A DNA stretch of 64,000 nt from Mobula hypostoma (taxonomy: Eukaryota), in the NCBI RefSeq assembly GCF_963921235.1, contig NC_086108.1, positions 44,826,001 through 44,890,000 of the forward strand. Direction: 5' to 3'. Made by a program: the position numbers and the translations under genes. Under the pieces are notes generated by a model that searched no databases, was not told where the DNA came from, and worked only from the letters and a program-made list of their open reading frames with translations. Positions within the stretch are counted from its first letter, which is position 1; the number at the start of each line of letters is the position of its first letter. Shown one piece after another: positions 1 through 64,000 of this stretch.

Positions 1-257
1 TTCACTTTAATGTCTTAGACAAAATTATGTACAACTTATGTCCTCTGAATCTGCGTCTATGCTGCTGCAAGCTTTTCACTGTTCTTGTACCTCACCATAC
101 CTGACAACAAACTTGACTTGACCACCACCTTCCCAAGGGTAATTGGCGAGCATGGATGATGAGCAGCTTTGTGCATACCGAAGATACAGCTTTAAAATCG
201 TATGTAAGAGCAGCAAATCACAGAAAAGGATTTCTTTCTCTGGGAATCTATTCATAC

Positions 258-401
258 CTGTAGCATGCGCTTCTTCAATGTAGACAATAAGAAAATCAGC
301 CACAGATTTGAAGTCTTTGACAAGATTTTTGAACTCATCAAAGCGAAAAAGAAACGGAGGTCAGGTGCAACTTCCAAAATTCAACACCAGTAGTCGATTA
401 T
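258..401 (-). CDS. DIO1: Type I iodothyronine deiodinase, coding exon 2 (contains Sec codon TGA at 361-363)
   Basis: Pyrimidine tract plus AG at 403-402; translates (D)[47 protein letters not shown]; donor G|GTATGA at 257; 144 nt. Remaining exons and SECIS lie outside the window. Confidence 0.96.
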
Positions 402-2768: not shown

Positions 2769-2992
2769 TGTTATCAGAAAGTTCAGCTTCATATATTTGA
2801 CATTTGGCCACCAACAAGATGCAGTTTAGTTTGCGCTTAGGTGTTTCGAATCTAAGCCTGCCTTCATGAAAGAATTATGTTACATTTAAAATATATATTA
2901 CAGAGATCAAATGCACTTATTGAACTAAAAATACGCGAACACATTACTGTTTTCACAAGCCCCGAACGTTATTACGTGTAACTCATACAGAC

Positions 2993-3323
2993 CCCTCGAG
3001 AAATCAAGCACTCGATGTTCTTTGTTGTCGAAGTCAATAACTCGTGTATTGGGCGCAAAGGCGCCCTCGAAAGCTTCATCTCCAATATTTGTCAATAGAA
3101 TTTTGGCTACTGCTTTCACGGTGCTGAAAGTGAAAAATGTTGGTCCCCAGTCTTCGTATTTGAATTTTGGATTTTGAGTCATGAATGTTTTCAATCCAGA
3201 TTTCAGCATGACTTTCTTCACAGTTTCAGGAAAGAGAAGCAGCATAAATTTACCAACTAATGCTTGCAAGCAAAAAAATATTAGCAAGCTCAAACTCTTT
3301 ACGTACACCACTAATTTCCCCAT
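2993..3323 (-). CDS. DIO1: Type I iodothyronine deiodinase, coding exon 1
   Basis: ATG at 3323; MGKLVVYVKSLSLLIFFCLQALVGK...MTQNPKFKYEDWGPTFF...DEAFEGAFAPN...HRVLDFSR matches the D1 N-terminus. 331 nt, phase-1 donor G|GTCTGT at 2992 (weak +3 position), in phase with exon 2. Confidence 0.93.
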
Positions 3324-3373
3324 CTCTGCAAAAAGCTAGCTGCTCCAATGGACACAAAAGCTAGCAGCGCCAG

Positions 3374-4664: not shown

Positions 4665-16947
<12,283 letters not shown>

Positions 16948-26735: not shown

Positions 26736-26799
26736 ATAGGGTTCTGAGTTGGATGATCAACCATGATCATACTGAATGGCGGTGAAGGCTCGAAGGGCC

Positions 26800-29700
26800 A
26801 AACGGTTTAGCAGGTAGACGATGGCATCCTCAACTCCTAGTCGGAGCTGGTAGGCGAACTGGAGGGGATCTAAGTGTGGCCTGACCGTAGGCCGGAGCAG
26901 CTCCAGAACAAGTCTCTCCAAGGTCTTCAAGATGTGGGAGGTCAATGCCACCGGTCTGTAGTCATTGAGGCCGCTGGGGCGCGGCGTCTTTGGCACAGGG
27001 ACGAGGCAGGACATCTTCCACAGTACAGGAATCTTCTGGAGCCTCAGGCTCAGGTTGAATACATGGCGAAGTACTCCACATAGCTGAGGGGCACAGGCTT
27101 TGAGCACCCTGGTACTGACACCATTCGGTCCTGCAGCCTTGCTTGGGTTGAGACGTTTCAGCTGTCTTCTCACCTGTTCAGCTGTGAAGCCCACCATGGT
27201 GGTTTCGTTTGGGGAAGGGGTATAGTCATGAGAGCAGGGTGGGGGACTGTGAGGAGAGGTAGGAGGGGAGAGTGGAATATGTGTTGGTTGGGGGCCGACA
27301 ACAGATGACTCATAGAACCATACTCCAAGTGGGGTCTGACCAGGGTCCTATATAGGCTGCAACATTACCATAGAAACCATAACCATAGAAACTACAGCAC
27401 AGAAACAGGCCTTTTGGCCTTTCTTGGCTGTGCCAAACCATTTTCTGCCTAGTCCCACTGACCTGCACACGGACCATATCCCTCCATACACCTCCCATCC
27501 ATGTATCTGTCCAATTTATTCTTAAATGTTAAAAAAGAATCCACCTCGTCTGGCAGCTCATTCCATACTCCCACCACTCTCTGTGTGAAGAAGCCCCCCC
27601 TAATGTTCCCTTTAAACTTTTCCCCCCTCACCCTTAACCCATTTCCTCTGGTTTTTTTCTCCCCTTGCCTCAGTGGAAAAAGCCTGCTTGCATTCACTCT
27701 ATCAATACCCATCATAATTTTATATACCTCTATCAAATCTCCCCTCATTCTTCTACGCTCCAGGGAATAAAGTCCTAACCTATTCAACCTTTCTCTGTAA
27801 CTGAGTTTCTCAAGTCCCGGCAACATCCTTGTAAACCTTCTCTGCACTCTTTCAACCTTATTTGTATCCTTCCTGTAATTTGGTGACCAAAACTGAATAC
27901 AATACTCCAGATTCGGCCTCACCAATGCCTTATACAACCTCATCATAACATTCCAGCTCTTATACTCAATACTTTGATTAATAAAGGCCAATGTACCAAA
28001 AGCTCTCTTTACGACCCTATCTACCTGTGACGCCACTTTTAAGGAATTTTGTATCTGTATTCCCAGATCCCTCTGTTCCACTGCACTCCTCAGTGCCTTA
28101 CCATTAACCCTGTATGTTCTACCTTGGTTTGTCCTTCCAATGTGCAATACCTCACACTTGTCTGTATTAAACTCCATCTGCCATTTTTCAGCCCATTTTT
28201 CCAGCTGGTCCAAGTCCCTCTGCAGGCTCTGAAAACCTTCCTCACTGTGTACTACACCTCCAATCCTTGTATCATCAGCAAACTTGCTGATCCAATTTAC
28301 CACATTATCATCCAGATCATTGATATAGATGACAGATGACAATGGACCCAGCACTGATCCCTGTGGCACACCATTAGTCACAGGCCTCCACTCAGAGAAA
28401 CAATTCTCTACCACCACTCTCTGGCTTCTTCCATCGAGCCAATGTCTAATCCAATTTACCACCTCTCCATGTATACCTAGCCACTGAATTTTCCTAACTA
28501 ACCTCCCATGCGGGACCTTGTCAAAGGCCTTACTGAAGTCCATGTAGACAATATCCACTGCCTTCCCTTCACCCACTTTCCTGGTAACCTCCTCGAAAAA
28601 CTCCAGTAGATTGGTCAACATGACCTACCACGCACAAAGCCATGTTGACTCTCCCTAATAAGTCCCAGTCTATCCAAATGCTTGTAGATTCTGTCTCTTA
28701 GTACTCCCTCCAATAACTTACCTACTACCGATGTTAAACTTACTGGCCTATAATTTCCCAGATTACTTTTCGATCCTTTTTTAAACAACGGAACAACATG
28801 AGCCACTCTCCAATCCTCCAGCACCTCACCTGTAGACAGCGACATTTTAAATATTTCTGCCAGGGCCCCTGCAATTTCAACACTAGTCTCCCTCAAGGTC
28901 CGAGGGAACACCCTGTCAGGTCCCGGGGATTTATCCACTTTAATTTTCCTCAAGACAGCATGGACCTCCTCCTTTTCGATCTGTACAGTTTCCATGATCT
29001 CACTACTTGTTTCCCTTAATTCCATAGACTTCATGCCAGTTTCCTTAGTAAATACAGACGCAAAAAACCTATTTAAGATCTCCCCCATTTCCTTTGGTTC
29101 CACACATAGCTGACCACTCTGATCTTCAAGAGGACCAATTTTATCCCTTGCAATCCTTTTGCTCTTAATATACCTGTCAAAGCTCTTTGGATTATCCTTC
29201 ACTTTGACTGCCAAGGCAACCTCATGTCTTCTTTTAGCCCTCCTGATTTCTTTCTTAAGTATTTTCTTGCACTTCTTATACTCCTCAAGCACCTTATTTA
29301 CTCCCTGCTTCCTATATATGTCATACAACTCCCTCTTCTTCTTTATCAGAGTTGCAATATCCCTTGAGAACCAAGGTTCCTTATTCCTATTCACTTTGCC
29401 TTTAATCCTGACAGGAACATACAAATTCTGCACTCTCAAAATTTCTCCTTTGAAGGCTTCCCACCTACCGATCACATCCTTGCCAGAGAACAACCTGTCC
29501 CAATCCACGCTTTTTAGATCCTTTCTCATTTCTTCCAATTTGGCCCTCCAGTTAAGAACCTCAACCCTAGGACCAGATCTATCCTTGTCCATGATCAAGT
29601 TGAAACTAATGGTGTTATGATCACTGGAACCAAAGTGCTCCCCTACACAGACTTCTGTCACTTGTCCTAACTCGTTTCCTAACAGGAGATCCAATATGGC

Positions 29701-31362
29701 ATCCCCTCTAGTTGGTCCCTCTATATATTGATTTAGAAAACTTTCCTGAACACATTTTACAAACTCTAAACCATCTGGACCCCTAACAGTATGGGAGACC
29801 CAATCAATATATGGAAAATTAAAATCCCCTACCACCACAACTTTATGTTTCCTGCAGTTGCCTGCTATCTCTCTGCAGATTTGCTCTTCCAATTCTTGTT
29901 GACTATTGGGTGGTCTGTAATACAATCCCACTAATGTGGCCATACCTTTCCTGTTTCTCAGCTCCACCCATAAGGACTCAGTAGACAAGCCCTCTAATCT
30001 GTCCAGCCTGAGCACTGCTGTAATATTTTCCCTAACAAGCAATGCTACACCCCCACCCACCTTTCATTCCTCTGCCTCGATCACATCTGAAACATCGGAA
30101 CCCTGGAATATTAAGCTGCCAGTCCTGCCCCCCCCCCCCAGCCCCGTAGCCAAGTTTCACTATTGCTATAATGTCATAATTCCACGTGTCAATCCACGCC
30201 CTCAACTCATCCGCCTTCCCCGCAATACTCCTAGCATTGAAATATATACACCTCAGAAGATTTTTTACCACCACTCACAACCTTTCTGTTAGCGGATTTG
30301 ATTGAACTTTCAACATCATTTATTTTCACCTCAGCCACACTGTCAGCTCTGGCACTCCAGTTCCCATCCCCCTGCAAATCTAGTTTAAAGCCTCCCCAAT
30401 AGCACTAACAAACCTCCCTGAAAGGATATTGGTCCCCCTGTAGTTCAAGTGTAACCCGTCTCTCTTGTACAGGTCCCACCTGCCCCAGAAGAGGTCCCAA
30501 TTATCCTGAAATCTGAAACCCTGCCCCCTATACCAGTTCCTCAACCACTTGTTCATCCTCCAGAGCATCCTATTCCTACCCTCACTGGCATGTAGCACAG
30601 GTAGCAATCCTGAGATTACCACCCTTGAGGTCCTGCTTTTCAACTTCCTACCAAGCTCTCTATACTCACTCTCCAGGACCTCCTCACTCTTCCTTGCTAT
30701 GTCATTGGTACCGATGTGCACCACGACATCTGGCTGATCACCCTCCCACTTCAGAATGTCATGCAAGCGATCAGAGACATCCTTCACCCTGGCACCCGGG
30801 AGGCAACAAACCATCCTGGATTCTCTGTCACGCCCACAGAACCTCCTATATGCACCTCTAACTATCGAGTCCCCTATCACTACCGCTCTCCTCTTTTCCC
30901 CCCTCCCTTCTGCACTGCAGAGCCAGCCTCAGTGCCAGAGATCCGGCTACTGCAGCTTGTCCCAGGTAAGTCATCCCCCTCAACAGTATCCAATGCGGTA
31001 TACTTGTTGTTGAGGGGAATGGCCATAGGGGAACCCTGCTCAGCCTGCCCTTTCCTCTTCCCTCGCCTGACAGTGACCCAATTTCCTGTCCTCTGCTCCT
31101 TTGGCGTAACTACCTCCCTGTAGCTACTATCTATAATCTCCTCATTCTCCCGAATGATCATGTGGGGGATGGGCAGGGGCCACAATGTCAAATCTGTTAA
31201 GGAACAGGTTAAGTTCATTGGCCCTGTCCACACTGCCTTCAGCTCCTCTGTTGCTAGTTTGCCGGAACCCAGTAATGGTCCTCATCCCCCTCCAGACTTC
31301 TCTCATGTTGTTCTGCTGGAGTTTCCACTCAAGCTTCCTCCTGTACCTGTCTTTACCTCTGG
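26800..31362 (-). mobile_element. Rex1/Babar LINE fragment (pieces 26800-27313 and 31158-31362) split by a CR1
   Basis: KAAGPNGVSTRVLKACAPQL...NDYRPVALTS...LDPLQFAY; pieces rejoin at TCAT. Confidence 0.88.
27314..31157 (-). mobile_element. Young, near-intact CR1 LINE (partial ORF1 SGNH esterase plus ORF2 APE-RT)
   Basis: ORF1 IGDSIVRG/VHIGTND/DGLHLN (30380-30880); ORF2 in long open frames of 481 and 390 aa; TTTCTATGG tail. Confidence 0.95.
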
Positions 31363-31415
31363 TAAACAATAACCAATTAACTTATTTTTTCTCTGAAATG
31401 TCGGAAACTTTAGCT

Positions 31416-32030
31416 CAGTGTTTCCCAACCTTTTTTTTTTATCCCACCACCCCCAAAGCACTTTCATACTTGCCAATGCTCCCCCAATGATTATGCTTTA
31501 AATTTTTATTTGTCTTTAAACCCAGATTGCATAGTACCTTTGTACTCTATAGCAGCTTCAATATTAATGTGATCCTTGAGCTTGATGGTTTTTAGCAAGA
31601 GTTGAATTATCTTATTCAAGTTGTGACTACCAATAAAAGCTGACATTTTTGAAAAGTATTTTTGCATCTTCATCATTCTGAATATTGATAATTACTTCTT
31701 GCAATCTCTCTTCCTGTTCTTCCACTTTGCAAAGAAATGGGCTGATTACCCAGTCCAAAATTTCCAGATCATTCAAATCCTTGGCTCGATTCTGAAAGTC
31801 CTTCAGGGACTGCAAGTGTAAGCAGTACTCTTGCAAATCACTGTCTGTGAAACAAAGTGTCATACTTCTCCTGCAGGGAAACAGGACATTCTTCTTCTAG
31901 TGTTTTGCTTATATATTTCCAATTTTCCGATAAGAGTGGACACTGCACTTTTTGCCTGGATTAAATTGAAATTCTCACCCTGCAGTTTCATATTTAGAAT
32001 GTTAATTTACCATGATAATCTAAACACCCA
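31416..32030 (-). mobile_element. hAT-Charlie/Buster transposon 3' fragment
   Basis: CAGTGTTTCCCAACC terminus; YCLHLQSL..DFQNR..DL...ILDWVISPF transposase remnant. Confidence 0.7.
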
Positions 32031-32098
32031 GAGAAAGTATTTTAAAGTCAGGATTGTAGTGCTTGGTACAACACAGAAAGAACCCGAAAGACCCTTAC

Positions 32099-32199
32099 CT
32101 CCTGGAGAGAGAGCATGGAAGACAGAATAGACGACAGCATTGTTTGCACTACACCATATCTGTCCTCTGCAAATGAGGCCGTTACAAGATGAGAAAGGG
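32099..32199 (-). CDS. NDC1: Isolated exon of nucleoporin NDC1 (TMEM48), C-terminal region; possibly a pseudo-exon
   Basis: T tract plus AG at 32201-32200; [34 protein letters not shown] matches the vertebrate NDC1 motif [21 protein letters not shown]...LQE; donor GAG|GTAAGG at 32098; 101 nt. No other NDC1 exon was recognised in the window. Confidence 0.85.
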
Positions 32200-33159
32200 C
32201 TGATTTAAAAAAAAGGACAAGTGAAATTAAATTGAAAAACATTAGATCGAACTTGATCAATCCTTATGGAATGACCTAGCAGAAAAAGTGTTCTATCTAG
32301 AATGTTGCAGGTCAATTAACATTGAAAGTTTGTCAAACTACAGAAATTCCTTGCAAGGATTGATGAATGAGGAAAATATTCTTGGTTTATTCTGGAACCT
32401 GGAGATTCACATTTATTAAACACTATTTAAATTACATCAGTAACATTTTGATCCCCAGAAATTTAGTCCTATTCATAGCTCCAGCATACTTTGCAGAATT
32501 GATGGTAAAGGCCAGTAGGGTAGCCCCTTGTTTATTTGAGATTTTAATCATCCAGTATGCCACTGATTGATTATAACAGTTGGGTGTAATCAATACAAGC
32601 AGATCAGCACAATATAAACACTCAGTGGCAAGCAATGGGGTATATTTAAACAGAAAATCTTGACTCTGTAGACACTTGTAAACTGAAGGGTGGTCAGGAA
32701 AAACAGCAAGTTTAAAATAAAACCAGTGTAATTTGGCTTCTTTTGATCTAATTGAACATATATAAAATAGTTAATGATTTTGATGAATTAGTGAGTAGAT
32801 ACCAAGCAGAATAGTTAGCTAGTAGTATAATTGCTTTATTTGCAAAGGATAATTGGGCCCAAACATGCCAAGAATATCATGTCAAATTGATAACAGATAT
32901 ACCCTTAAATTTTAGGCAGTTCAAGACTCCTGTGCAAATGAAGAACATCTTTGCTGGGGTTTTCTGAACTGCTCTTTAACACTGGGATGGGAATTTCCTT
33001 CAAAATTTTCCAACATTTACAATGGGGAATCTGCTGACTGAGATCTGGAATAGGCACAAATCATTTAATTTCAATAAAGAAGAGTTGCCAAGAAGGGCAA
33101 GGATAAGCTAAATTATATTTAATTTTTAATTGAGTTTGCTTAAAGTTTTTTCTTGTTTA

Positions 33160-33360
33160 GAGATACAGCACAGAACAGGCCTTTCCCGCCCAACAAGCTG
33201 CACCACCCTTCAACCAACCCATTTAACCCGAGCCAATTCACAGGACTATTTACAATGACCAACTAACCTATTAACTGGTACATCTTTGGAATGTGGGAAG
33301 AAACCAGAGCAACCATGTTCACAGAAAGGATATACAACGTCTCACAAAGGACGCCAAAAT
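33160..33360 (-). mobile_element. HE1-like SINE fragment
   Basis: AGATACAGCACAGAACAGGCCTT tail and TCTTTGGAATGTGGGAAGAAACCAGAGCA V-domain on the reverse strand. Confidence 0.6.
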
Positions 33361-34444
33361 GTTTCTTTAAAAAGATTTTAAAAATTAGACTTCAAATCAT
33401 AAATGATTCATTTATTTTTAAAAGTTGGGATATTTCTATACGTTAGGGACATTCAGCAATATATATTTCTAAACATTTAAAGTTACAACAGCTGTCAAAT
33501 CTTCAGGTTATGAATCAACCGGCTTTATATTTTCCCCATTTGTTGATGGAGCATGATATGACCTGACCAACACATGACAGCATGAAGTTGTACAATGCTC
33601 TGCCACACACAGGGTCCGGTCGTTTAGTTGCCTTGATGGACTTAGAAAATACACAGTTGTTGGAAGTAAACTATGGGTCATTGTTCAAGATCAAGATGAG
33701 AAACTGGTTATTTAGATTGAAAATATATGAAAGCCAAAGCATTCTTTGCCGGCTAAGGCATTAATTATAGTTCCCGAAGCTTCTTATCATCAAGTTTTAA
33801 TCCCCTTTCACTAAATTCCACATGCAACCTTATATAATTAATGCTCAAGAGATTGTACAGATTTTTAACATGAAAATATATACATGTTCTTTTGTTTCCT
33901 GTGGCAGTATTTATGCAGATTCAATGAGTGTGTTATTGCCCCTTTACCAGCACAATGACTTCAATATTTAACCAGCTACTTAGTCCACTTCTATGGGAGG
34001 GGATGAATAATAAATAATTGAATGGCAAGGCAGGAAATCAAATTCAAAAAGGGTTGTTTGGAGGCAGTATTTTAGTGGAGTTAAAACAGCTGATAGCCCA
34101 ATTCAGATGCAAGGTACAAAGGTTAAGAATTCAATGACATCAACAACAGACGTAGGCTCTGCAATCTCTTGAAGCTGGTCATGTTCCACAAATTCCTGGC
34201 TAATTTACCTCCAGTCAACCTCTCAACCTTTACCCACATCCTTTGATTTATGTCATCTCCACAAATCTATTGTTCTCATTTTGAATAGGTGTAACAGGGC
34301 ATCCAGCTGAGAATTGCAAGTGTCTGGGGGAAAAATTCTTGTCCACTATTCTAAATAGTTCTTATCCTTTCAGTTAAACTTTCCAGCCTGAGGGAACAAT
34401 TGTTTAGCATATCAAAATTGTGTGCAGTGATCCCTTAATTTTCA

Positions 34445-34525
34445 GCTGCCTGATTTGCTGAGAAGCTCCAGCATTTTGAGTGTGCTGCTTAAGATTTCTA
34501 GCGTCTGCAGAATCTCTTGTGTTCT
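34445..34525 (+). mobile_element. Short Penelope pLTR insertion
   Basis: pLTR end flanked by TTAATTTTCA repeats at 34435-34444 and 34526-34535. Confidence 0.6.
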
Positions 34526-34792
34526 TTAATTTTCATAATTTTGTGGTCGAAATCCACCGATGCATTAGTCTGTGACATTGTTGTAGAATCAGCATGTGGA
34601 GCGTCTAATATCACTTGATGTCCTGCATAGCCACCAACTTTATACCAAGGGTTCTCCTCAATCGCTTAAGAAGGACAGACCAGACAAAATCCACACTGCT
34701 TCACCTGAGCTATATATATAACAATTTACTGGGATAAAACTCAGTGATGAAACATCTTTAAAGTGCTAAATATTCATTACATCACAGCCCCC

Positions 34793-35260
34793 CTCATGTG
34801 CTGGGGCAGCAGGCTGAGGGTAGCAGACACCAACAGAATCAACAAACTCATTTGTAAGGCCAGTGATGTTGTGGGGATGGAACTGGACTCTCTCATGGTG
34901 GTATCTGAAAAGAGGATGCTGTCTAAGTTGCATGTCATCTTTGTCAATGTCTCCCATCCACTACATAATGTACTGGGTGGGCACAGGAGTACATTCAGCC
35001 AGAGACTCATTCCACCGAGATGCAACGCAGAGCGTCATAGGAAGTCATTCCTGTCTGTGGCCATCAAACTTTACAACTCCTCCCTTGGAGGGTCAGACAC
35101 CCTGAGCCAATAGGCTGGTCCTGGACTTATTTCATAATTTACTGGCATAATTTACATATTACTATTTAACTATTTATGGTTCTATTACTATTTATTATTT
35201 ATGGTGCAACTGTAACGAAAACCAATTTCCCCCGGGATTAATAAAGTATGACTATGACTA
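34793..35260 (+). mobile_element. Rex1/Babar LINE 3' end
   Basis: CWGSRLRVADTNRINKLI...SHPLH...RHRKSF..AIKLYN; AATAAAG(TATGAC)n tail. Confidence 0.85.
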
Positions 35261-35781
35261 ACTGCCCCCACTGGGAATCACTGCCGTAGCTCATCAGCTT
35301 TGTAGTAAATCCAAGCTTGCTGCCATGGATCAGTAATGTTTCCTAATTCCAATGTGATACTTTGGTAACATGCTACTTGCCCAGCAATGACTTTCATAAT
35401 TTATTTTTATTAATAATTGCCTTTTATGACTTGTTATGATTTAGTTAATAATCTATAATTTCGTGTTCCCATTTAAAATGGGGGGGGGGAAGATAAAGTA
35501 TACCAATAAATCAATTACTTTTCTACCTTCCTGTGCAGTCATACTCAGTTATTTCACCTTTTTTAAAAACAAATTCTTGTTTGTGTTCTGGTGCTGGTGA
35601 TTTTTACTGACTCAATACATTTTTTCTGTCTAAAATACAAACACAGTATCCAATTCCCTCGCTCACCATAATCCCAAGAATTTGTGGAATTCTCCAATCT
35701 TTGAGGGTTTTCATTGAGTAATTGTGGAACCACTTTTCCTTTTGTTCCATTGGCCTGGTTTAAAATTAGTGAGAAAGAGTA

Positions 35782-35917: not shown

Positions 35918-36351
35918 TAATGAAAAAGAGTAGGTGTTTTCTATAATTTGCAAAATATGATGCAAAATTTAGGAGCTTTAAATGATACCTTTTTAAATAA
36001 ACCCATTTTACTTTGGTTTATCATGTTCACCCTCCCTATCATAGGTGCGCTTTACATACCTAGATTACATTTCTCTCTGCCAGTATCCCAACCTGATCTT
36101 GTTATTCAGTCAGTTTCAGTACCGTTTCTGAGTTCACCTTTGTCTGCTATATTTTCAGTTTGAAAAAGCAGTGTCTTTTGGATGTATTTTCAAAGTATTT
36201 ATTGAACCTAAGTTTGAAATAATTAACTCATCCTTAAATTATAAAGACACTATGCATTTGTGAACTTGTCAATTCATTTTTATTTTATAAATTTCAATTA
36301 CATCATGTCTCTGCATCCTAAACAAAAAGTTTCTTTTTAATTTTTTTTTAG

Positions 36352-36900
36352 ATTTGTTCTCTGATATCTTGGTGTGCAGAAAGACTCTTCAAACTAAACA
36401 GTCGGTGTAACACGGATTATTTAATTAGTCTACAAAGATATATGCTGATTTATTTGACTATGGTAGACATCTAAACCAATTAAATCAGGTTTTGGGATTT
36501 TTTTTCTTTGTGGCTAATGTTTTTCCTGTTCTATTTTTCCACTGTCTAATGAAAGGTACACATTACAAATTGTAAATACTGTTTCTCATAGGTTGCTAAT
36601 TGAGCTTGGGGAAAGATATTGTTTGTAATCTTTAATGTATAGATAATTAAATTACAATTTTTTGAACAGCTATACTTTATTTAAAATATGCCAATTGTAA
36701 AATGTACATAAGTTAGTTTTATTTCATAGTTTTATGTAGAACTTGACAAAAAGGTGAAATCCATTGAATGTATAAACACATGTCATATGGAATTGTTACA
36801 GCCATTATAATGAGAATCACTGTATGCAAATGAAGAATTGCCAATTTTTGGGTGAAAGATTTGCTGTGTCTTTAGTGTATCTTTCTTACTTCCAGGAATG
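36352..36900 (+). other. Candidate YIPF1 terminal 3'UTR exon
   Basis: Long T tract plus AG ending 36351, followed by non-repetitive AT-rich UTR-like sequence with TGTA motifs and ATTAAA near 36646. End coordinate approximate; needs transcript support. Confidence 0.3.
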
Positions 36901-38794: not shown

Positions 38795-40970
38795 CAGTGG
38801 TTTCCATCTCAATTTTTTTTTTGGGGGGTCCTGGCCCCTTGGCTCCCAGACCACATCCCCAGCAAACCCTCTCCCTTTCAGGCCATTACATAATAAGTAT
38901 AAAGAATTTTGATTCCTGATGCACAATGAAAGAAAAAGAATTGCAAATTCAAAGCAGTGACAAATAATTGCAAATATGGTACAAATAAAATTAACAGAAT
39001 AAAATAAAATTACAGTCAAAAATTTCATCAATAATTTTAGATCATACATTGGTAGTCCAAATATTCACTACTAAATTGCTTTTTCATCTTTCTATGAGAT
39101 GGATGTGTTTGGTGCAGTGATGTGAGCTTCTCAATATCGATCTGACTGTCACTCAGGAGTTTCACATCCTGAAGTTCAGTAATTTGCAGTCTGTTTCATT
39201 CCTTTGAAAGAAGTTGGGCAACTGTTGGAAAGGCAATTAAAAACATCTTGACCTTTTTCCATAGTGCTAAGATAATGTTCAGAGATTTCTTTCTGCAACC
39301 AAAAGTCTTGATATGAGTTTCTGAACTGTGGCTTCAGTTTAAAATCATTTTGTGGCGAAATCAGTTTTTTCTCCATCCTTTCTGTTAATTCCTCATTCAA
39401 AGTGTTGAGGAATGGATTTATTACCCAATCTGGAATTTAGAGCGAGAGAAGATCCTGAAATCTCTCTTATATTTCTCTATGCAGCTCATCAATTTGACGC
39501 AGTATACTTGAAGATCATCATAGGAGTGGAAATTGGAAAAGTCATGACAGCCGATGTTGCACTTAAATAGGGTTAACTTGGACAGAAATGTGGAAACAAC
39601 TGATTTGACTTTGATAAGATTCACACAATTTCCTTGCAATTGAAGTATTACTACATTAAATTTTGCAAATAATTCTGACAAATAAGCAAAGTCATGCCTA
39701 ATATTCTAGAGTTGATTACTGAATGAAGAGTTCAAGTCTTCAAAGAATTTAGTCACTGTTTCAAACATCTCAGGCAGTTTCCTTTACAGAGCCACCTCAC
39801 TTTTGTTGTGCAACAGCAAGCATTCAAACTGTCCATCGTTCTCAATGCAAAGCTCTTGAGATAGTTGAGAGCATAGGACTTGATTTTATTTACTGATGTG
39901 ATAACAGTATTTAATGATTTGTGCAGCCAATCACTTGGGTTTTTTTTGTCAAGTTGTTGTCTGTGAATTACACAGTGAATGGTAAATATATTAGCTACAG
40001 CTTTTTTCAAGAAAGTGATAACTCCACAGTGGCATCCTATCGTTGGTGGTGCCCCACCTGTTGGACAAGCAAGAATGTTGGTGAGCAGAATGTCCTCTTT
40101 GAAAAATTACCCATCAACCTGAAATATTGACTCCCTTTTTGTACCTATTACTAGTCCCCTTGTAAATAACTTCTCCTGAACTATGCGTTCATCTTTTATG
40201 AAGTAAACATAAAAAAGAAGCAAAGTTATTTTGCTTGGTGAAGTTGACACATCTAACTGTAGAGCAAGTTCTGTTGTCCACAAGTATGTTGCACAATGGG
40301 TCTTCCACATGCTCAGACATCACATTTATTCATCTTCCAACAGAGTTGTCGCTGAGTAGAATTACTTTAGTTATTTGGTTTGATGACCTATGCAAAACTG
40401 TACTCAGAGGCTTCCATACTGCTGGCAGAAGCAGTTCTACAATTGTATAAGGCTTTTCAGATTTAGCAACGAGCAATGAAATGCATAAAGCACACAAACC
40501 ATCAGTTTTGTTGTGAGGTGCTGACAATCATTTTACAGTGTTTTCCATTTTTAAAAGTTTTCACAAAGTGACTGAACATCAGCCAAGCATAAACAAAAGA
40601 AAATCCACAGATGCTGCATTGTGTGTGTTGAACATAATCTGAGTTCCTGTTCACTTTATCAGATTGTATTCTCTTCAAATGTTCATGGAGCCTGGACGGT
40701 TTCATTGCCTCATTTGGAAAAAAAATACACAACAGACACCTTGACTGCTTTTGGTTACTTGGTGTTGGTATAAATCCATCTTTCAGCCCATATTGTCTAC
40801 ACTTTTTTGTTTGGTCTGCTTCTGCCATTTTTGTTATGGATCAACAACCACAGATCAATTGCCTATTATTTGTCCAACCTCAAGTGCTGTGATCAATAAA
40901 AAGGAAAGTTACCATGTCATCATTGCTCAGGCAAAATGCAGGATAAAATCCATAATCATTTGTCTTGCTC
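38795..40970 (-). mobile_element. hAT-Charlie/Buster transposon with pseudogenised transposase
   Basis: BED-finger N-terminus (KKCRQY..GF...CLLC...NEAMKPSRL.EHL), ALQLD.ST, IHCVIHRQ.L, VRWL.KGNCLR in broken frames; CAGTGGTTTCC terminus after CTCTAGAG target. Confidence 0.85.
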
Positions 40971-42723: not shown

Positions 42724-43647
42724 CACTGGACAACAATCTTTTTCAATAGTGTTGCTTCCCCGGGATTTTTTGTTTGTTTATGATAAACCACTTGAAGGTG
42801 AACACATGTTCAGACTACTTGTATCACATAGGAATTTGGAGAAACAAGAATTTTTTTTATTGAATATAATGTTTTCAATTGCACAATGGTGCTGACACTT
42901 TGCAATAGTTCAACCAAACTAGAAATGTTTTATTGATGATTTTCATTTGTGCTCAGTGCCTAAGGCTTCTCACTTAAGTGTCCAACAATAATCAGCCAGC
43001 ATTGATGGATTCTAGTTGCCCTGATACCATTTCTCCATGACCACAATGTCCTGACGAAACCTTTCATCATGCTCGTCACTGACAGCACTAAGATTTGCGA
43101 AGAAGTCTTCGAAATGGGAATTCAGAAAATGAATCTTTAGTGACATGTAGCACTTCATGGTTTTGTAAGCTTGAAGTAGGTTGTCAACCAGCTGCATGTA
43201 GTTTGATGCTCTGTACTTGCCAACAAAATTTTCAACATCTTTGAATGCTTTCCATGTGATTTTTCTGGTCCCACTAGAAGCTCTTTGAATTACCTGTCAT
43301 TGATAACCTGTTTGATTTGCAGACCAACACAAATGTCTTCATTAATCTTGGCATCAGTTATTCTGGGAAATATCTGCGTCAAATATCAAAATCCTTCAAG
43401 GAAATTCATAACCTTTCTAAAACCTACCCTGTCTAAGCATGCCTGGACAAGATAGAAAACATTTCAGCTTACATTGTGGGGAACATTTTAATTGACTTGA
43501 ATTATGAATTGGAATAACAAAAATAGGCTATTTTAAAAATATTGTGCATGATAGGGAAATTTCATGGTGATTTTCATGAGCAGCAGCCCCAAATCCATAA
43601 GATACCACCCAAAAGTATTTAGGAAGCAAAAGTGTTGTTATCCAGTG
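42724..43647 (-). mobile_element. Chapaev3-type (CMC) DNA transposon, internally deleted
   Basis: TIRs CACTGGACAACAA / TTGTTATCCAGTG; MKCYMSLKIHFLNSHFEDF..NLSAVSDEHDERFRQDI..MEKWYQG transposase motif. Confidence 0.78.
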
Positions 43648-49905: not shown

Positions 49906-50721
49906 ATGTCCAACCCAAAGGGGAAGATCTGGGACTCACCTGCACAGAGAAACACATTGACCAAGTATGAGACCAAGAAACTCTTACTGAAATACAGAAA
50001 AGAGCGAGATGAAGCATCAAAAAAAGGGGAAGTGAACCGAGATAAATTGCATGTGATTCAGACATCAATGGGAATGCAGATCCGAGAATTGAAGGAGAAG
50101 GTAAAGGTGCTGAACTCAGAGAACAAAGATTTACACAAAACCATTAAGAAACTGCAGCCAGAGTTACAACTGGATACCAACGCTAAACTGAGGAGCAAGC
50201 TGACCAAAGAGGTGCTAAAAGAACTGAAGGAGAGGGCTGAACGATGCAAGGACCTGCAGCAAGAAAACGCCAGGTTAAATCAGGAAATTGATCATCTGAC
50301 TTTGAAGTTGGCACAGACAGAGAATGTCAGGAAGGTTTTCGAAGACCAGCTCGTGGCTGCACAGAGTCAGGTGAGAAGTCTGAGCAACGAACATGACCGC
50401 ATGGTAAAACTATGGGAAGAAGCCAAAATACAGAGAGAAAAAATCCTGCAAATTAACCACCTCTTCAGACAGTCTCTCTTTAGTAAACAGCATTGTCGTC
50501 AGACAGTGGATAAATGCATTCAGACCATCGTCTCCATCCCCGTCTACAGGCGCTTTCACATGAGAAAACCCGAGGGGACGGTCAAGCAGCAGGTGGTTTA
50601 TCAGGAAAAGGAGAAGGTGAAGCAAAGGTTTATAAATGAGGCACCGGTGACCCCCAAAGAGAGAAGAGGCAACACTTCAAACAATGCATTGACTAAAATC
50701 TACAGAACTTCCCCAAACTGA
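49906..50721 (+). CDS. Uncharacterised intronless coiled-coil protein, 271 aa
   Basis: 816-nt open frame in non-repeat DNA, K/E/L/Q-rich heptad pattern, Kozak -3 A, acceptor-like TTTGTCCCAG ending 49890, TGTA-tg-AATAAA at 50757-50768. Confidence 0.75.
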   Translation: MSNPKGKIWDSPAQRNTLTKYETKKLLLKYRKERDEASKKGEVNRDKLHVIQTSMGMQIRELKEKVKVLNSENKDLHKTIKKLQPELQLDTNAKLRSKLTKEVLKELKERAERCKDLQQENARLNQEIDHLTLKLAQTENVRKVFEDQLVAAQSQVRSLSNEHDRMVKLWEEAKIQREKILQINHLFRQSLFSKQHCRQTVDKCIQTIVSIPVYRRFHMRKPEGTVKQQVVYQEKEKVKQRFINEAPVTPKERRGNTSNNALTKIYRTSPN

Positions 50722-61358: not shown

Positions 61359-62649
61359 AAACCATTCATTTCACTTCTTTTACACTTGTTGTTCATCTTG
61401 AATGTGCTTCTGGAACTGTTGGAGCCTGCGATTTGCATTTTGGATGATCCAGTGCTTTATGTCTCCGAGAGGATTCCGGGAGGCAGTAATCGCAAGCCTT
61501 AAGGGGAGGAGGCTGCGGAATGGGGCACGAGTCGATTAAAGCATCGATTCTTCACCGATTAAAGCAATGAGAGAAATTTAGACAGAGGTGAATGCAGAGG
61601 GTGAGCACTGACTGCCTGCCTTCTGATTGCTGGTGGGATCACTCTGCTGCTGGAGAGGGGCGCCTGTGTGGCCTGTTGCTGTGCTTGGAAGATGTAACCA
61701 AGGATACCTGTGTTTATCGATATGGATTTGGACTATGGACGTTTTTTTCCATTTTTTATATTCTGTGTTTTCACCCATTCTTTCTTGTTTTTTTTTGTGT
61801 GGGGGAGAGAGTGGGATTTGGGCTCAATGTTCCTGTGGCAATTTGTGCAGGGGGCAGGGGGGCCTGGGGGTCAATGTTCTTGTGTTTTATTAGCTTTTTG
61901 AGCAGGGAGAGGGATTTAGAGGTGATGATCATGTTGCAGTTCTTCTTTGTGCACGGGGTGGGGGTAGGGGTGGGGTTGCTGTTTCTCTCTGAACTGACCG
62001 ACATGGTTTTCCTTGGTTTCCTGCCTGTCTGGAGAAGAAGAATTTCAGAGTTGTACACTGCATACACACGTTGATAATACACGAACTTTTGAAATACAAG
62101 GGATGCATATGGCAGTGTTGGGACTACAGACCAATATTCAGCTTCTGGATTTTAATCCTGCTAAGATCGTTGGGTTTGAAGTTTTCTTTCTCTCGTACTT
62201 GTAAGATACATCTGTGAAATTTATTTAAGGCATTGTTAATAAATTTCTAGTAATATTAGTGTATGCTTCAAAACTGTTCTGAACAAAGAACTAAGTTTAC
62301 AATTTCAGTTAATAAGACAGCTAGAAATTGGAAATGCTAGTCTTAAGGCTCTATACATCTTCAGATACAATGTAACCCAGAATAAATCAGCATACATAGT
62401 GGACTTCAGTAAACCAGAAAATGCCAATTCCCTGTTGGTTTAAAGCATCATAACGTTAAATCACTTCAACAAAACATACAGCAAAAGTTAATATCTATTA
62501 GCAATTGCACTGTTCCGAAGAAAACTGGGAGCCTAGCAGGAGCTTCAAGACAGGTACTGAGAAAACCGGGGGAAAAGTCTGACCATTTTATTCTGGATAG
62601 ACTTAATTTTTACATGCATTTACTTTTCAATGTAGAAATTGATAACCAG

Positions 62650-63276
62650 GCCACATTCCATGTGAATTGGAGCATATTGAGACCAGTGCATCTTGGCCCA
62701 ATTAAGCAGCTGCCCCAAAAACCCAAAGTTTCATAGAAATATCTTAAAAAAGACAAACTACTGTTTAATAGAGTAACAAATTATGTATATAAATGAAATA
62801 CAGAATTAATACACTACCAATACTACTACAGTACAAAAAACTGTATTAGTTCTTAATAGCTGTCGATGGAAGAATTCATACGGTGTACGTTGCCCTGTTC
62901 TTTTGATTGAGTGTAAATGAACAAAATCTGCAGACACCCAATACAGGTAATGGACTGTCTTCTTTGCCGGTGTCAAAAATCACTGCTTTTTACTTTGGTA
63001 GTGGTCGGCCCAAATTAATAACATAACACAAGCATACACAACTGAGGCTATATAAAAACTGTTTGCTTCAAGCATGGTGTAGTGCTTAATGGCCACCCAA
63101 GTGTGCGTGATTGAAGCTAGTTAGAAATTGTTTGGCAACAGTGTCCCTATTAAGCAGCAGTGTCCCAAATAAATGAAGGAAATTCTGGCTATTTTCTTGA
63201 TTAGTTTTTGTTCAAGAGTTGTCCCAGATAAGCAGCTGCCCTAATTAATTGATAGCCAATCAACCTGAATCCACTG
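62650..63276 (-). mobile_element. Tigger/pogo-like non-autonomous element
   Basis: Reverse-complement similarity to 10679-11726; ends GAATCCACTG followed by TA. Confidence 0.65.
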
Positions 63277-64000
63277 TATTTGCCAACTAGATTTGTATCC
63301 AAAAATTGATAAAAGCCATTGTTTACTGGGATCATGTTACGTAATCTAGTTTAGAATACAGATTCGCATACAACAAAATCTCCAAATAAAAAAAAATCAA
63401 AATTATTGCAAGCAGTAGATTAGTTTTAAGCAATTAATGTTTTAAGTTGTTATCTTTTCATAGATACTAGAAATCAAACACATTTTAAGTTGCAGAAAAG
63501 GGGATGTTTACAAAGAAGTGTATTAGGGCAAGGACCAAGAGAAACAAGAGAAGGGATACAGATGGTGGTACCAGTTGAGAAGAGGAAACTGGAGTCTGGT
63601 TAATCAGTGCTGATCTGTCTGAAGGAGGTGCATCGAGCTAAAGCACTGAAAAATATTTAGCTGATCAGGCAGCATCCATGGAGAGAGAAAACATTTAACT
63701 AACCAGTAAGCTTAATGTTATTGGCCAGTTCTAATACAAATATGGTAATCGGGTCATCTTAAATTTCTATATTCACCTTCACCTCCAACTGTTTACATCT
63801 CCTCCAGACAGAAAAGACAGCATTCACCTCAGCCATTCCAATAAATCTCACTTGGTCTCCATTCAAACCCTTCTCTATAACACAAAACACTCCAAAGATG
63901 CTAAACATTTCTTGTATTTTATGGTGTACTTCCAGATTTGCAATGTCAACAGTTGTGTTTGCTTTTCTCCCCTCAACATTTATCTTGTAAATATGGTCTA

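What the first reader, a model, noticed from the sequence alone, without database searches (positions are those of the whole stretch)
31370..32300. Orphan, inverted NDC1 exon with intact splice sites
Seen: one 101-nt NDC1 exon on the minus strand with an open frame, a strong acceptor and a GTAAGG donor. It lies ~70 bp from a hAT-Charlie remnant, and I recognised neither flanking NDC1 exon in 32 kb on either side. Known: in human, NDC1 lies downstream of YIPF1 in the same orientation. Inference: a local inverted duplication or transposition of an NDC1 segment, possibly into the last YIPF1 intron, or a misassembled/inverted contig piece. If it is the only copy, the assembly or gene structure is unusual.
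Basis: partly seen in the sequence, partly recalled or inferred. Interest (0 to 1): 0.7.

Follow-up and report, generated by a model that had tools for sequence, protein, structure and literature searches.

The report
Out-of-place copy of NDC1 exon 16
One intact exon of the nuclear-pore gene NDC1 lies about 32 kb from where the rest of that gene begins in this ray genome, most likely as a very young stray duplicate or an assembly slip, so it matters to genome curators more than to biology.

Summary
The exon is real. Bases 32099-32199 (minus strand) encode 33 residues matching human NDC1 568-600, with the same splice boundaries as exon 16 in three other rays. It is the only NDC1 coding exon in the window.

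It is not inverted relative to its own gene. In rays NDC1 runs opposite to YIPF1. The window's right end (62.1-64.0 kb) is collinear with the stretch just before the ray NDC1 stop codon, so the gene body should start about 0.4 kb beyond the window, on the minus strand.

The exon belongs to a block of at least 2.7 kb (32004 to at least 34742: 95 nt of intron 16, exon 16, intron 15). Here the block sits inside YIPF1's last intron (15614-36351) and ends sharply against a truncated hAT.

Public contigs show that its sequence is the expressed one (one base differs). They show no diverged second copy, no extra depth, and no listed contig bridging the left edge.

My reading is a displaced, redundant, near-identical copy:
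- a very young, perhaps heterozygous, insertional duplication (about 0.4)
- an assembly false duplication or misplacement (about 0.3)
- an interleaved gene arrangement (a long shot)

It is ordinary either way. The scan holds no note of this on other DNA.

The parts
32099..32199 (-). NDC1 exon 16 (101 nt, 2 nt + 33 codons), intact acceptor and donor
   Evidence: Same boundaries as exon 16 of Pristis and Amblyraja; 88/101 and 83/101 nt identical.
32004..32098 (-). First 95 nt of NDC1 intron 16. Homology to other rays stops exactly at 32004.
   Evidence: 72/95 identical to Pristis
32200..34742 (-). 3' part of NDC1 intron 15, interrupted by small repeats at about 33155-33314 and 34465-34529
   Evidence: Collinear blastn matches to L001 18506-20816, L002 23379-25434 and L003 16434-18509
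31630..32003 (-). hAT-like transposase remnant, cut off inside its ORF at 32003. It forms the left edge of the block.
   Evidence: ORF pieces; 47% protein identity to the hAT copy at 39.3-39.7 kb; roughly 1000-fold contig depth
34797..35262 (+). 5'-truncated LINE 3' fragment inside or at the right edge of the block; possible GCCCCC target-site duplication
   Evidence: (very high depth; other copies start at 34797)
26760..31300 (-). Near full-length LINE (esterase-type ORF1, endonuclease/RT ORF2), next to the hAT remnant
   Evidence: ORFs; repeats
15431..15613 (+). YIPF1 penultimate coding exon, ending ...GCK|gt
36352..36900 (+). YIPF1 last exon (runs on beyond 36900); sets the last intron at 15614-36351
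   Evidence: RNA contigs X10 and X11 at depth about 95 begin at 36350, with 471-1131 spliced letters upstream; acceptor
49906..50718 (+). zgc:113691 ortholog (coiled-coil gene). In other rays it is the left neighbour of the NDC1 3' end.
62133..64000 (-). Stretch collinear with the 3' flank or UTR of ray NDC1. Exon 18 is expected about 350-470 nt beyond the window end.
   Evidence: 64000 matches L001 15551; the stop codon there is at 15896

Best explanation
The exon is a displaced, redundant copy of exon 16 of the neighbouring NDC1 gene, carried in a block of at least 2.7 kb with its own intron flanks.

Shown:
- In rays NDC1 lies on the minus strand to the right of zgc:113691.
- The window ends in sequence collinear with the NDC1 3' flank.
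- The block is orthologous to exon 16 plus proximal intron 15.
- The block sits inside YIPF1's last intron, on the same strand as NDC1 and about 30 kb past its 3' end.
- Its left junction is a sharp, non-homologous break against an internally truncated hAT.
- Its right edge lies at or just beyond a LINE fragment.

Inferred:
- The working exon 16 sits in its normal place a few kb beyond the window. The copy here arose very recently: it is at least 99.8% like the expressed version.
- The likely mechanism is one replication or repair event with two template switches. One switch was a blunt or microhomology jump from the hAT into intron 16. The other returned at or through the LINE fragment. The result is an insertional duplication that may still be heterozygous or polymorphic.
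- From this position the exon cannot be spliced into NDC1, because it lies beyond exons 17-18 and the gene's end, and it is antisense to YIPF1. It therefore has no function of its own.
- The one base in which it differs from the RNA (32170, Thr to Ala at a conserved position) would be the first sign of drift.
For: Identity and orthology.

Ray gene order, with NDC1 exons 18, 17 and 16 lying 4-9 kb right of zgc:113691 on the opposite strand.

Collinearity:
- Window 35511-64000 matches Pristis L001 110-15551.
- Window 32004-34418 matches L001 18506-20816.
- The match reaches 34742 in Amblyraja.

No exon 17, exon 18 or intron 16 sequence anywhere in the window.

The copy is young and matches the working exon:
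- RNA-like contigs of the same organism cover about 104 nt (the exon plus 3) at depth about 50, with a single difference at 32170.
- An intronic RNA contig matches 32200-32512 and 32522-32764 without mismatch.
- RNA-like runs of five organisms share exact 31-mers of the exon.

The sister-species contig behaves the same way.

The window is one gapless stretch. A non-homologous junction such as 32003|32004 is hard for a long-read assembler to invent (own knowledge).
Against: - Contig depth over the block (8.3-12.2) equals that of the neighbouring unique sequence (7.9-9.7). Twofold depth is about 2 SD off and 1.5-fold is only mildly off, and the tool itself warns that depth is not copy number.
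- No listed contig bridges 32003|32004 or 34796|34797 with 31 or more letters on both sides.
- The same-sample DNA contig shows only C at 32170, with no second path. Contigs pop such bubbles, so this is weak.
- The second copy beyond the window end was not seen directly, because no tool reached outside the window.
- If the possible target-site duplication of the LINE fragment is real and the right junction is therefore old, the sister species should carry the block here too. That fits a very young event poorly.
Confidence: 0.4

Rival explanations
1. Assembly artefact. The animal has only one exon 16 block, in its normal place in NDC1. The assembly has either placed it here or written it twice (false duplication or misplacement).
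For: - The block has the same contig depth as its neighbours.
- Same-organism contigs show 0 differences over about 2.3 kb of the block.
- The contig carrying the exon runs on to the left into letters unlike the window's hAT, and a contig at the right end runs on past 34801.
- No contig is shown bridging either edge.
- The block's sequence is the expressed one.
- Even VGP-grade assemblies keep 0.3-2.3% false duplication, mostly on the same scaffold (PMC9516828).
Against: - There is no gap in the window, whereas false duplicates typically flank gaps and show half depth (PMC9516828).
- The left junction joins the middle of a hAT to unique intron DNA with no shared repeat. Assemblers do not normally create such a junction without reads that carry it.
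- The assembly has C at 32170 while RNA contigs of the same organism have only T. That fits a silent extra copy better than the single working copy, unless the animals differ or the site is heterozygous.
Confidence: 0.3
2. The block is the only copy, in a truly interleaved arrangement. In this lineage NDC1 exons 16-18 lie inside YIPF1's last intron, and YIPF1's last exon plus zgc:113691 lie inside NDC1 intron 15. Exons 17-18 should then sit directly left of 32004 and have been lost from this haplotype or assembly.
For: - Single-copy depth, and the exon sequence is the expressed one.
- The block-LINE-YIPF1 intron continuity is compatible with contigs of both species: X5 reaches 26 nt into the LINE, and X1 and X5 contigs run 35236/35274-35810.
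- A possible target-site duplication around the LINE.
- The exon-bearing contigs of both species continue left into unique, non-window letters.
Against: - It needs two rare things at one place: a fixed rearrangement and a deletion or assembly loss of exons 17-18.
- The window's right end stays collinear with the ray NDC1 3' flank to within about 350 nt of the stop codon.
- The Mobula birostris annotation lists no NDC1 gene range over zgc:113691 +/-10 kb.
Confidence: 0.1
3. An old, decaying orphan exon: a duplicate fixed long ago, before the two sampled species split, and drifting since.
For: The sister species has the same block sequence, 1.4% diverged, adjacent to the LINE fragment. The assembly's Ala at a conserved Thr position could be decay.
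Against: - An old copy should differ from the working exon and intron by several percent. Instead RNA contigs differ at 1 of 101 exon bases and 0 of 556 intron bases.
- No second set of contigs at 85-99% likeness appears over the exon in either species.
- The exon (87% identical to Pristis) is better conserved than its flanks (67-76%).
Confidence: 0.05
4. Transposon-mediated capture: hAT transduplication, or 5' or 3' transduction by the adjacent LINE, carried the exon here.
For: The exon lies 95 nt from a hAT remnant and about 0.8 kb from the 5' end of a near full-length LINE, all on the same strand.
Against: - The hAT is cut inside its transposase ORF at the junction, so the block is not between element ends.
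- Other copies of the hAT run on past 32003 with their own sequence, and the block is at single-copy depth while the hAT has about 1000 copies.
- For LINE 5' transduction, the source locus would need the same hAT after the 95 nt. The three other rays lack it there, and the exon-bearing contigs continue differently.
- The LINE fragment at the right edge points away from the block.
Confidence: 0.03

Closest known systems
Exon 16 (third from last) of batoid NDC1, as in Pristis pectinata, Amblyraja radiata and Rhinoraja longicauda
   Same: Same splice boundaries and phase. 28/33 residues and 88/101 nt identical to Pristis. Flanking intron sequence is collinear for at least 2.7 kb. Same strand relative to zgc:113691.
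   Different: In those rays it lies 2.2-2.6 kb beyond exon 17, to the right of zgc:113691. Here it lies to the left, inside YIPF1's last intron, with no exon 17 or 18 after it.
Small insertional (dispersed) duplications made by replication template switching or unequal recombination (FoSTeS/MMBIR, NAHR; own knowledge)
   Same: A few kb copied to a site tens of kb away on the same strand. One junction has no homology and the other lies at a repeat. The copy is a non-functional gene fragment.
   Different: The parent copy and the junction reads were not seen directly, and depth does not show the extra copy.
False duplications in genome assemblies (Ko et al. 2022, PMC9516828)
   Same: A gene piece appears twice or out of place on one scaffold. 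The sequence is identical to the real one and there is no excess read depth.
   Different: No assembly gap beside it. The junction is not at a haplotig or contig end. The piece is only about 3 kb, inside a gapless stretch.
Exon shuffling by LINE transduction or transposon gene capture (own knowledge)
   Same: An exon with intron flanks lies next to a LINE and a DNA transposon.
   Different: The block is not bracketed by element ends, exists at single-copy depth, and its junction cuts the hAT internally.

Membership tests
NDC1 nucleoporin (Pfam PF09531 Ndc1_Nup) | Sequence match to the family model above the curated threshold | tested here: met
   35.4 bits against a cut-off of 29.8; PDB NDC1 chains at E 1.5e-8 and 3.2e-8; own NDC1 profile at E 3.5e-14
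NDC1 nucleoporin (Pfam PF09531 Ndc1_Nup) | Orthologous exon with conserved boundaries and flanking introns | tested here: met
   Alignment with Pristis and Amblyraja exon 16 and introns
NDC1 nucleoporin (Pfam PF09531 Ndc1_Nup) | Lies in order with the gene's other exons, so that it can be spliced into the mRNA | tested here: not met
   No other NDC1 coding exon in 64 kb. The block lies beyond the gene's 3' flank.
NDC1 nucleoporin (Pfam PF09531 Ndc1_Nup) | Transcribed and spliced from this locus | tested here: inconclusive
   An exon-sized RNA contig is present but carries T, not C, at 32170. Contigs cannot assign it to this copy or to a twin.
Processed pseudogene or retrocopy | No introns, neighbouring exons fused, poly(A) tail | tested here: not met
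   Intron 15 and the start of intron 16 are retained on both sides
Transposon-captured gene fragment | Fragment enclosed by the element's ends and multiplied along with it | tested here: not met
   hAT cut internally at the junction. Block at single-copy depth against about 1000-fold for the hAT.
Segmental or insertional duplication | A second copy at the parent site | tested here: inconclusive
   The parent site lies outside the window. A contig with the same block sequence but another left flank exists, yet depth shows no extra copy.
Assembly false duplication (PMC9516828) | Half or low read depth, an adjacent gap, and no reads spanning the junctions | tested here: inconclusive
   No N in the window. 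Depth equals the neighbours and no bridging contig is listed. Raw reads were not available.

The most novel reading that the evidence does not exclude
The block is the only exon 16 in the genome and the genes are truly interleaved. NDC1's last exons would lie antisense inside YIPF1's last intron. YIPF1's last exon and zgc:113691 would lie inside NDC1 intron 15. That state could be reached by tandem duplication followed by reciprocal loss, and the reference haplotype would then carry a loss of exons 17-18.
Probability: 0.08. Interest if true: 0.5.

Novelty: new member of a known kind. Interest (0 to 1): 0.18.

Why it matters
- For annotation: an intact exon with strong splice sites, antisense in a YIPF1 intron, can mislead gene predictors and synteny-based orthology calls.
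- For curation: it flags a place in this assembly that needs a read-level check. Either the reference carries a very young structural variant beside an essential gene, or about 3 kb is written in the wrong place.
- For comparative genomics: NDC1 is convergent with YIPF1 and zgc:113691 in batoids, unlike in human, so human gene order is not a safe yardstick here.
- No new mechanism or gene function is implied.

Tried and rejected
1. Normal minus-strand NDC1 gene with missed exons in the window: rejected. The profile search of all ORF pieces and tblastn/blastn with ray exons 17-18 and intron 16 find nothing. Three weak collinear plus-strand hits at 60-64 kb (E 14-33) were read and are noise.

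2. Inversion relative to the parent gene: rejected by the ray loci.

3. Retrocopy: rejected, because introns are retained.

4. hAT or LINE capture: rejected (see rival explanations). No bracketing direct or inverted repeats around the block.

5. Fetching this species' own NDC1 or the contigs that carry the exon led nowhere:
- The NDC1 search returned only teleosts in its top 120.
- A search with the exon ORF found no ray fragments.
- Exact look-ups of ten ORFs from the block, and of the window's own zgc:113691 protein, are not on record.
- Mobula birostris and Chiloscyllium loci come without DNA.

6. Earlier notes of the scan hold nothing on NDC1 elsewhere in this genome.

7. Using contig depth as copy number: kept only as weak evidence. 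The tool warns against it, and only two neighbouring contigs serve as the yardstick.

8. The single read-laying run lists 8 pieces per run, so the unaligned 511, 496 and 97 letters of the edge contigs could not be read.

Full report
**What is there.** On the minus strand, 32099-32199 is a 101-nt open exon. It follows a pyrimidine-rich acceptor (…ttttaaatcAG) and precedes a GTAAGG donor. In phase (2 nt + 33 codons) it reads [33 protein letters not shown].
- It matches solved NDC1 chains: Xenopus 554-586 of 660 (E 1.5e-8) and human 568-600 of 674 (E 3.2e-8).
- It passes Pfam's curated threshold for Ndc1_Nup: 35.4 bits against 29.8, profile positions 504-538 of 607.
- It scores 49.8 bits (E 3.5e-14) against a profile I built from 108 full-length NDC1 proteins.

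The hAT-like remnant starts 95 nt after the donor, at 32003.

**Is it alone?** Yes, as far as coding sequence goes.
- The same profile, with HMMER's filters off, was run against all 3281 six-frame ORF pieces of at least 12 aa. Apart from this exon it finds nothing better than E 0.87.
- tblastn with five NDC1 proteins finds only this exon.
- tblastn with ray exons 17 and 18 finds nothing. blastn with the ray DNA from the NDC1 3' end to exon 16 finds only LINE matches.
- Three weak plus-strand hits near the right end were inspected and are noise.

**Whose genome, and what is the right yardstick?** The coiled-coil ORF at 49906-50718 (+) is the ortholog of zebrafish zgc:113691. It is 98% identical to a Mobula birostris protein and 82% identical to that of Pristis pectinata, so the window comes from a Mobula-like ray.

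I fetched the loci around this gene in Pristis (L001), Amblyraja (L002) and Rhinoraja (L003). In all three, NDC1 (686-688 aa, PF09531) lies 4-5 kb to the right on the opposite strand, with the two 3' ends facing each other. My profile places exons 18, 17 and 16 there in order. Exon 16 lies 2.2-2.6 kb beyond exon 17.

**Collinearity.**
- Window 35511-64000 is collinear with Pristis L001 110-15551. This covers YIPF1's last exon, zgc:113691 and the stretch leading to the NDC1 stop codon (at L001 15896).
- The two skates agree. The NDC1 gene body should therefore begin about 350-470 nt beyond the window end, on the minus strand.
- Separately, window 32004-33150, 33357-34086 and 34256-34418 are collinear, in the same orientation, with L001 18506-20816, which is exon 16 and intron 15.
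- Amblyraja and Rhinoraja extend this match to 34742 and 34710.
- A three-way alignment shows identical exon boundaries. Homology runs 95 nt into intron 16 and then stops dead at 32004, where the window continues with the hAT ORF.
- The exon is 87% identical to Pristis, against 67-76% in the adjacent intron.

The object is therefore a block of at least 2.7 kb. It is in its native orientation but sits about 30 kb beyond the 3' end of its gene.

**Where it sits.** RNA-like contigs of the same organism (depth about 95) start at 36350 and carry 471-1131 further spliced letters. The sequence shows …TGTAAG|gt at 15613 and ag|ATTTGTTC at 36352. YIPF1's last intron is thus 15614-36351, and the block lies inside it, antisense.
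- Left of the block are the truncated hAT and a LINE cluster (17.4-31.3 kb).
- Right of it is a 466-nt LINE 3' fragment (34797-35262) with a possible GCCCCC target-site duplication.
- About 200 unassigned bases follow, and homology to the Pristis YIPF1 intron starts at about 35467.

**What public reads add (one call, contigs only).**
- DNA contigs of the best-holding sample match the block with 0 differences over 32004-33185, 33284-33513, 33567-33944 and 33997-34497. Their depth (8.3-12.2) is like that of the neighbouring unique sequence (7.9-9.7).
- A sister species, 1.4% diverged, has the same block.
- Two RNA-like runs of the same organism cover about 104 nt, the exon plus 3, at depth about 50. 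The bin means of 26.6 and 28.1 over 196 nt imply exactly that length.
- Those RNA contigs show one difference from the window: T instead of C at 32170. This turns the assembly's Ala back into Thr, the usual residue in vertebrates. The sister species' DNA also has T.
- One RNA run also has intronic contigs starting exactly at the acceptor base 32200 and matching 556 nt without mismatch.
- RNA-like runs of five organisms share exact 31-mers of the exon.

The block's sequence is therefore that of the working exon and intron, not of an old decaying copy. No second, diverged contig covers the exon in either DNA run.

**The edges.** The 1693-nt DNA contig that carries the exon is laid only from 32004 on, although it has 511 more letters to the left. 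The sister-species contig behaves the same way, with 496 letters. At the right end, one DNA contig and one RNA contig run on past 34801 for 97 and 85 letters. The sister-species contig stops 26 nt into the LINE, as a de Bruijn contig should.

If the table lists the eight longest pieces per run, which fits the listing, then the 511 letters are not the window's hAT. In that case a copy of the block with another left flank, presumably intron 16 at the parent site, exists in both species. Whether the junction written in the window also exists in the reads cannot be told. A short, low-coverage path leading into a 1000-copy repeat is exactly what contig builders prune, and the tool states that contigs show presence, not absence.

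**Weighing the readings.**
- An old orphan is excluded by the near-identity to the RNA and by the lack of a diverged twin.
- Transposon capture is excluded. The hAT is cut internally, the block is single-copy while the hAT has about 1000 copies, and the block is not bracketed by element ends.
- A retrocopy is excluded by the retained introns.
- That leaves a near-identical extra copy, or the single copy written in the wrong place.
- For a real, very young insertional duplication, perhaps heterozygous: the stretch is gapless. The left junction is non-homologous, which assemblers do not invent. The architecture, one blunt junction plus one at a repeat, is typical of template switching. The C/T pattern fits a silent copy carrying C and an expressed copy carrying T.
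- For an assembly artefact: no extra depth, no bridging contig seen, and zero differences between reads and block. Even good assemblies keep 0.3-2.3% false duplication (PMC9516828), although the usual hallmarks of adjacent gaps and half depth are not seen here.
- I put these at about 0.4 and 0.3.
- An interleaved arrangement with this as the only copy would reconcile single-copy depth with function. It needs exons 17-18 to have been lost from this haplotype, and it conflicts with the collinear right end and with the Mobula birostris annotation, which shows no NDC1 range over zgc:113691 +/-10 kb. I give it about 0.1.

**Verdict.** The exon is genuine NDC1 exon 16, correctly spotted and correctly called out of place. 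It is not inverted relative to its gene, and from this position it is very unlikely to do anything. Whether the stray copy is in the animal or only in the assembly needs raw long reads across 32003|32004 and the right edge, plus a look at the first few kb beyond the window. Interest is low. The scan holds no note of the same thing on other DNA.

Noticed in passing
window 49906-50718 (+): The 'unrecognised coiled-coil gene' of finding s1-142710 is the ortholog of zebrafish zgc:113691. It is 98% identical to a Mobula birostris protein, 82% to Pristis pectinata 'uncharacterized protein zgc:113691', and 52-71% to those of skates and sharks. It has no Pfam domain above threshold. A Bagarius yarrelli gene model fuses a homologous N-terminus to NDC1.
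   Followed up: partly
L001 15896-20816, L002 21350-27556, L003 15072-20807; window 62133-64000: In three batoids NDC1 is on the strand opposite to zgc:113691 and YIPF1, with the 3' ends 4-5 kb apart. This differs from the same-strand order in human. The window's last 1.9 kb is collinear with that NDC1 3' flank.
   Followed up: yes
window 32170: The assembly and the same-sample DNA contig have C (Ala on the minus strand). Two RNA-like runs of the same organism and the sister species' DNA have T (Thr, the usual residue in vertebrate NDC1). This is either a private or heterozygous allele, or the first substitution in a silent copy.
   Followed up: partly
window 32200-32764: One RNA-like run has intronic contigs (depth 11 then 5) that begin exactly at the last intron base before exon 16 and fade with distance. 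The pattern looks like the 3' part of an excised intron 15.
   Followed up: no
window 15614-36351: YIPF1's last intron is 20.7 kb and mostly LINE copies (17.4-31.3 kb), including a near full-length element at 26.7-31.3 kb with an esterase-type ORF1. The last exon, from 36352, is expressed at contig depth about 95.
   Followed up: partly
window 79-360 and 2928-3335 (-): These are iodothyronine deiodinase (DIO1-like) exons, head to head with YIPF1 as in human (Pfam T4_deiodinase, E 8e-12).
   Followed up: no
window 39179-40840 (-) and 43015-43296 (-): There are further hAT-like transposase remnants, and another transposase-like ORF without a Pfam hit. The hAT at 39.3-39.7 kb is 47% identical in protein to the remnant next to the NDC1 exon.
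   Followed up: no
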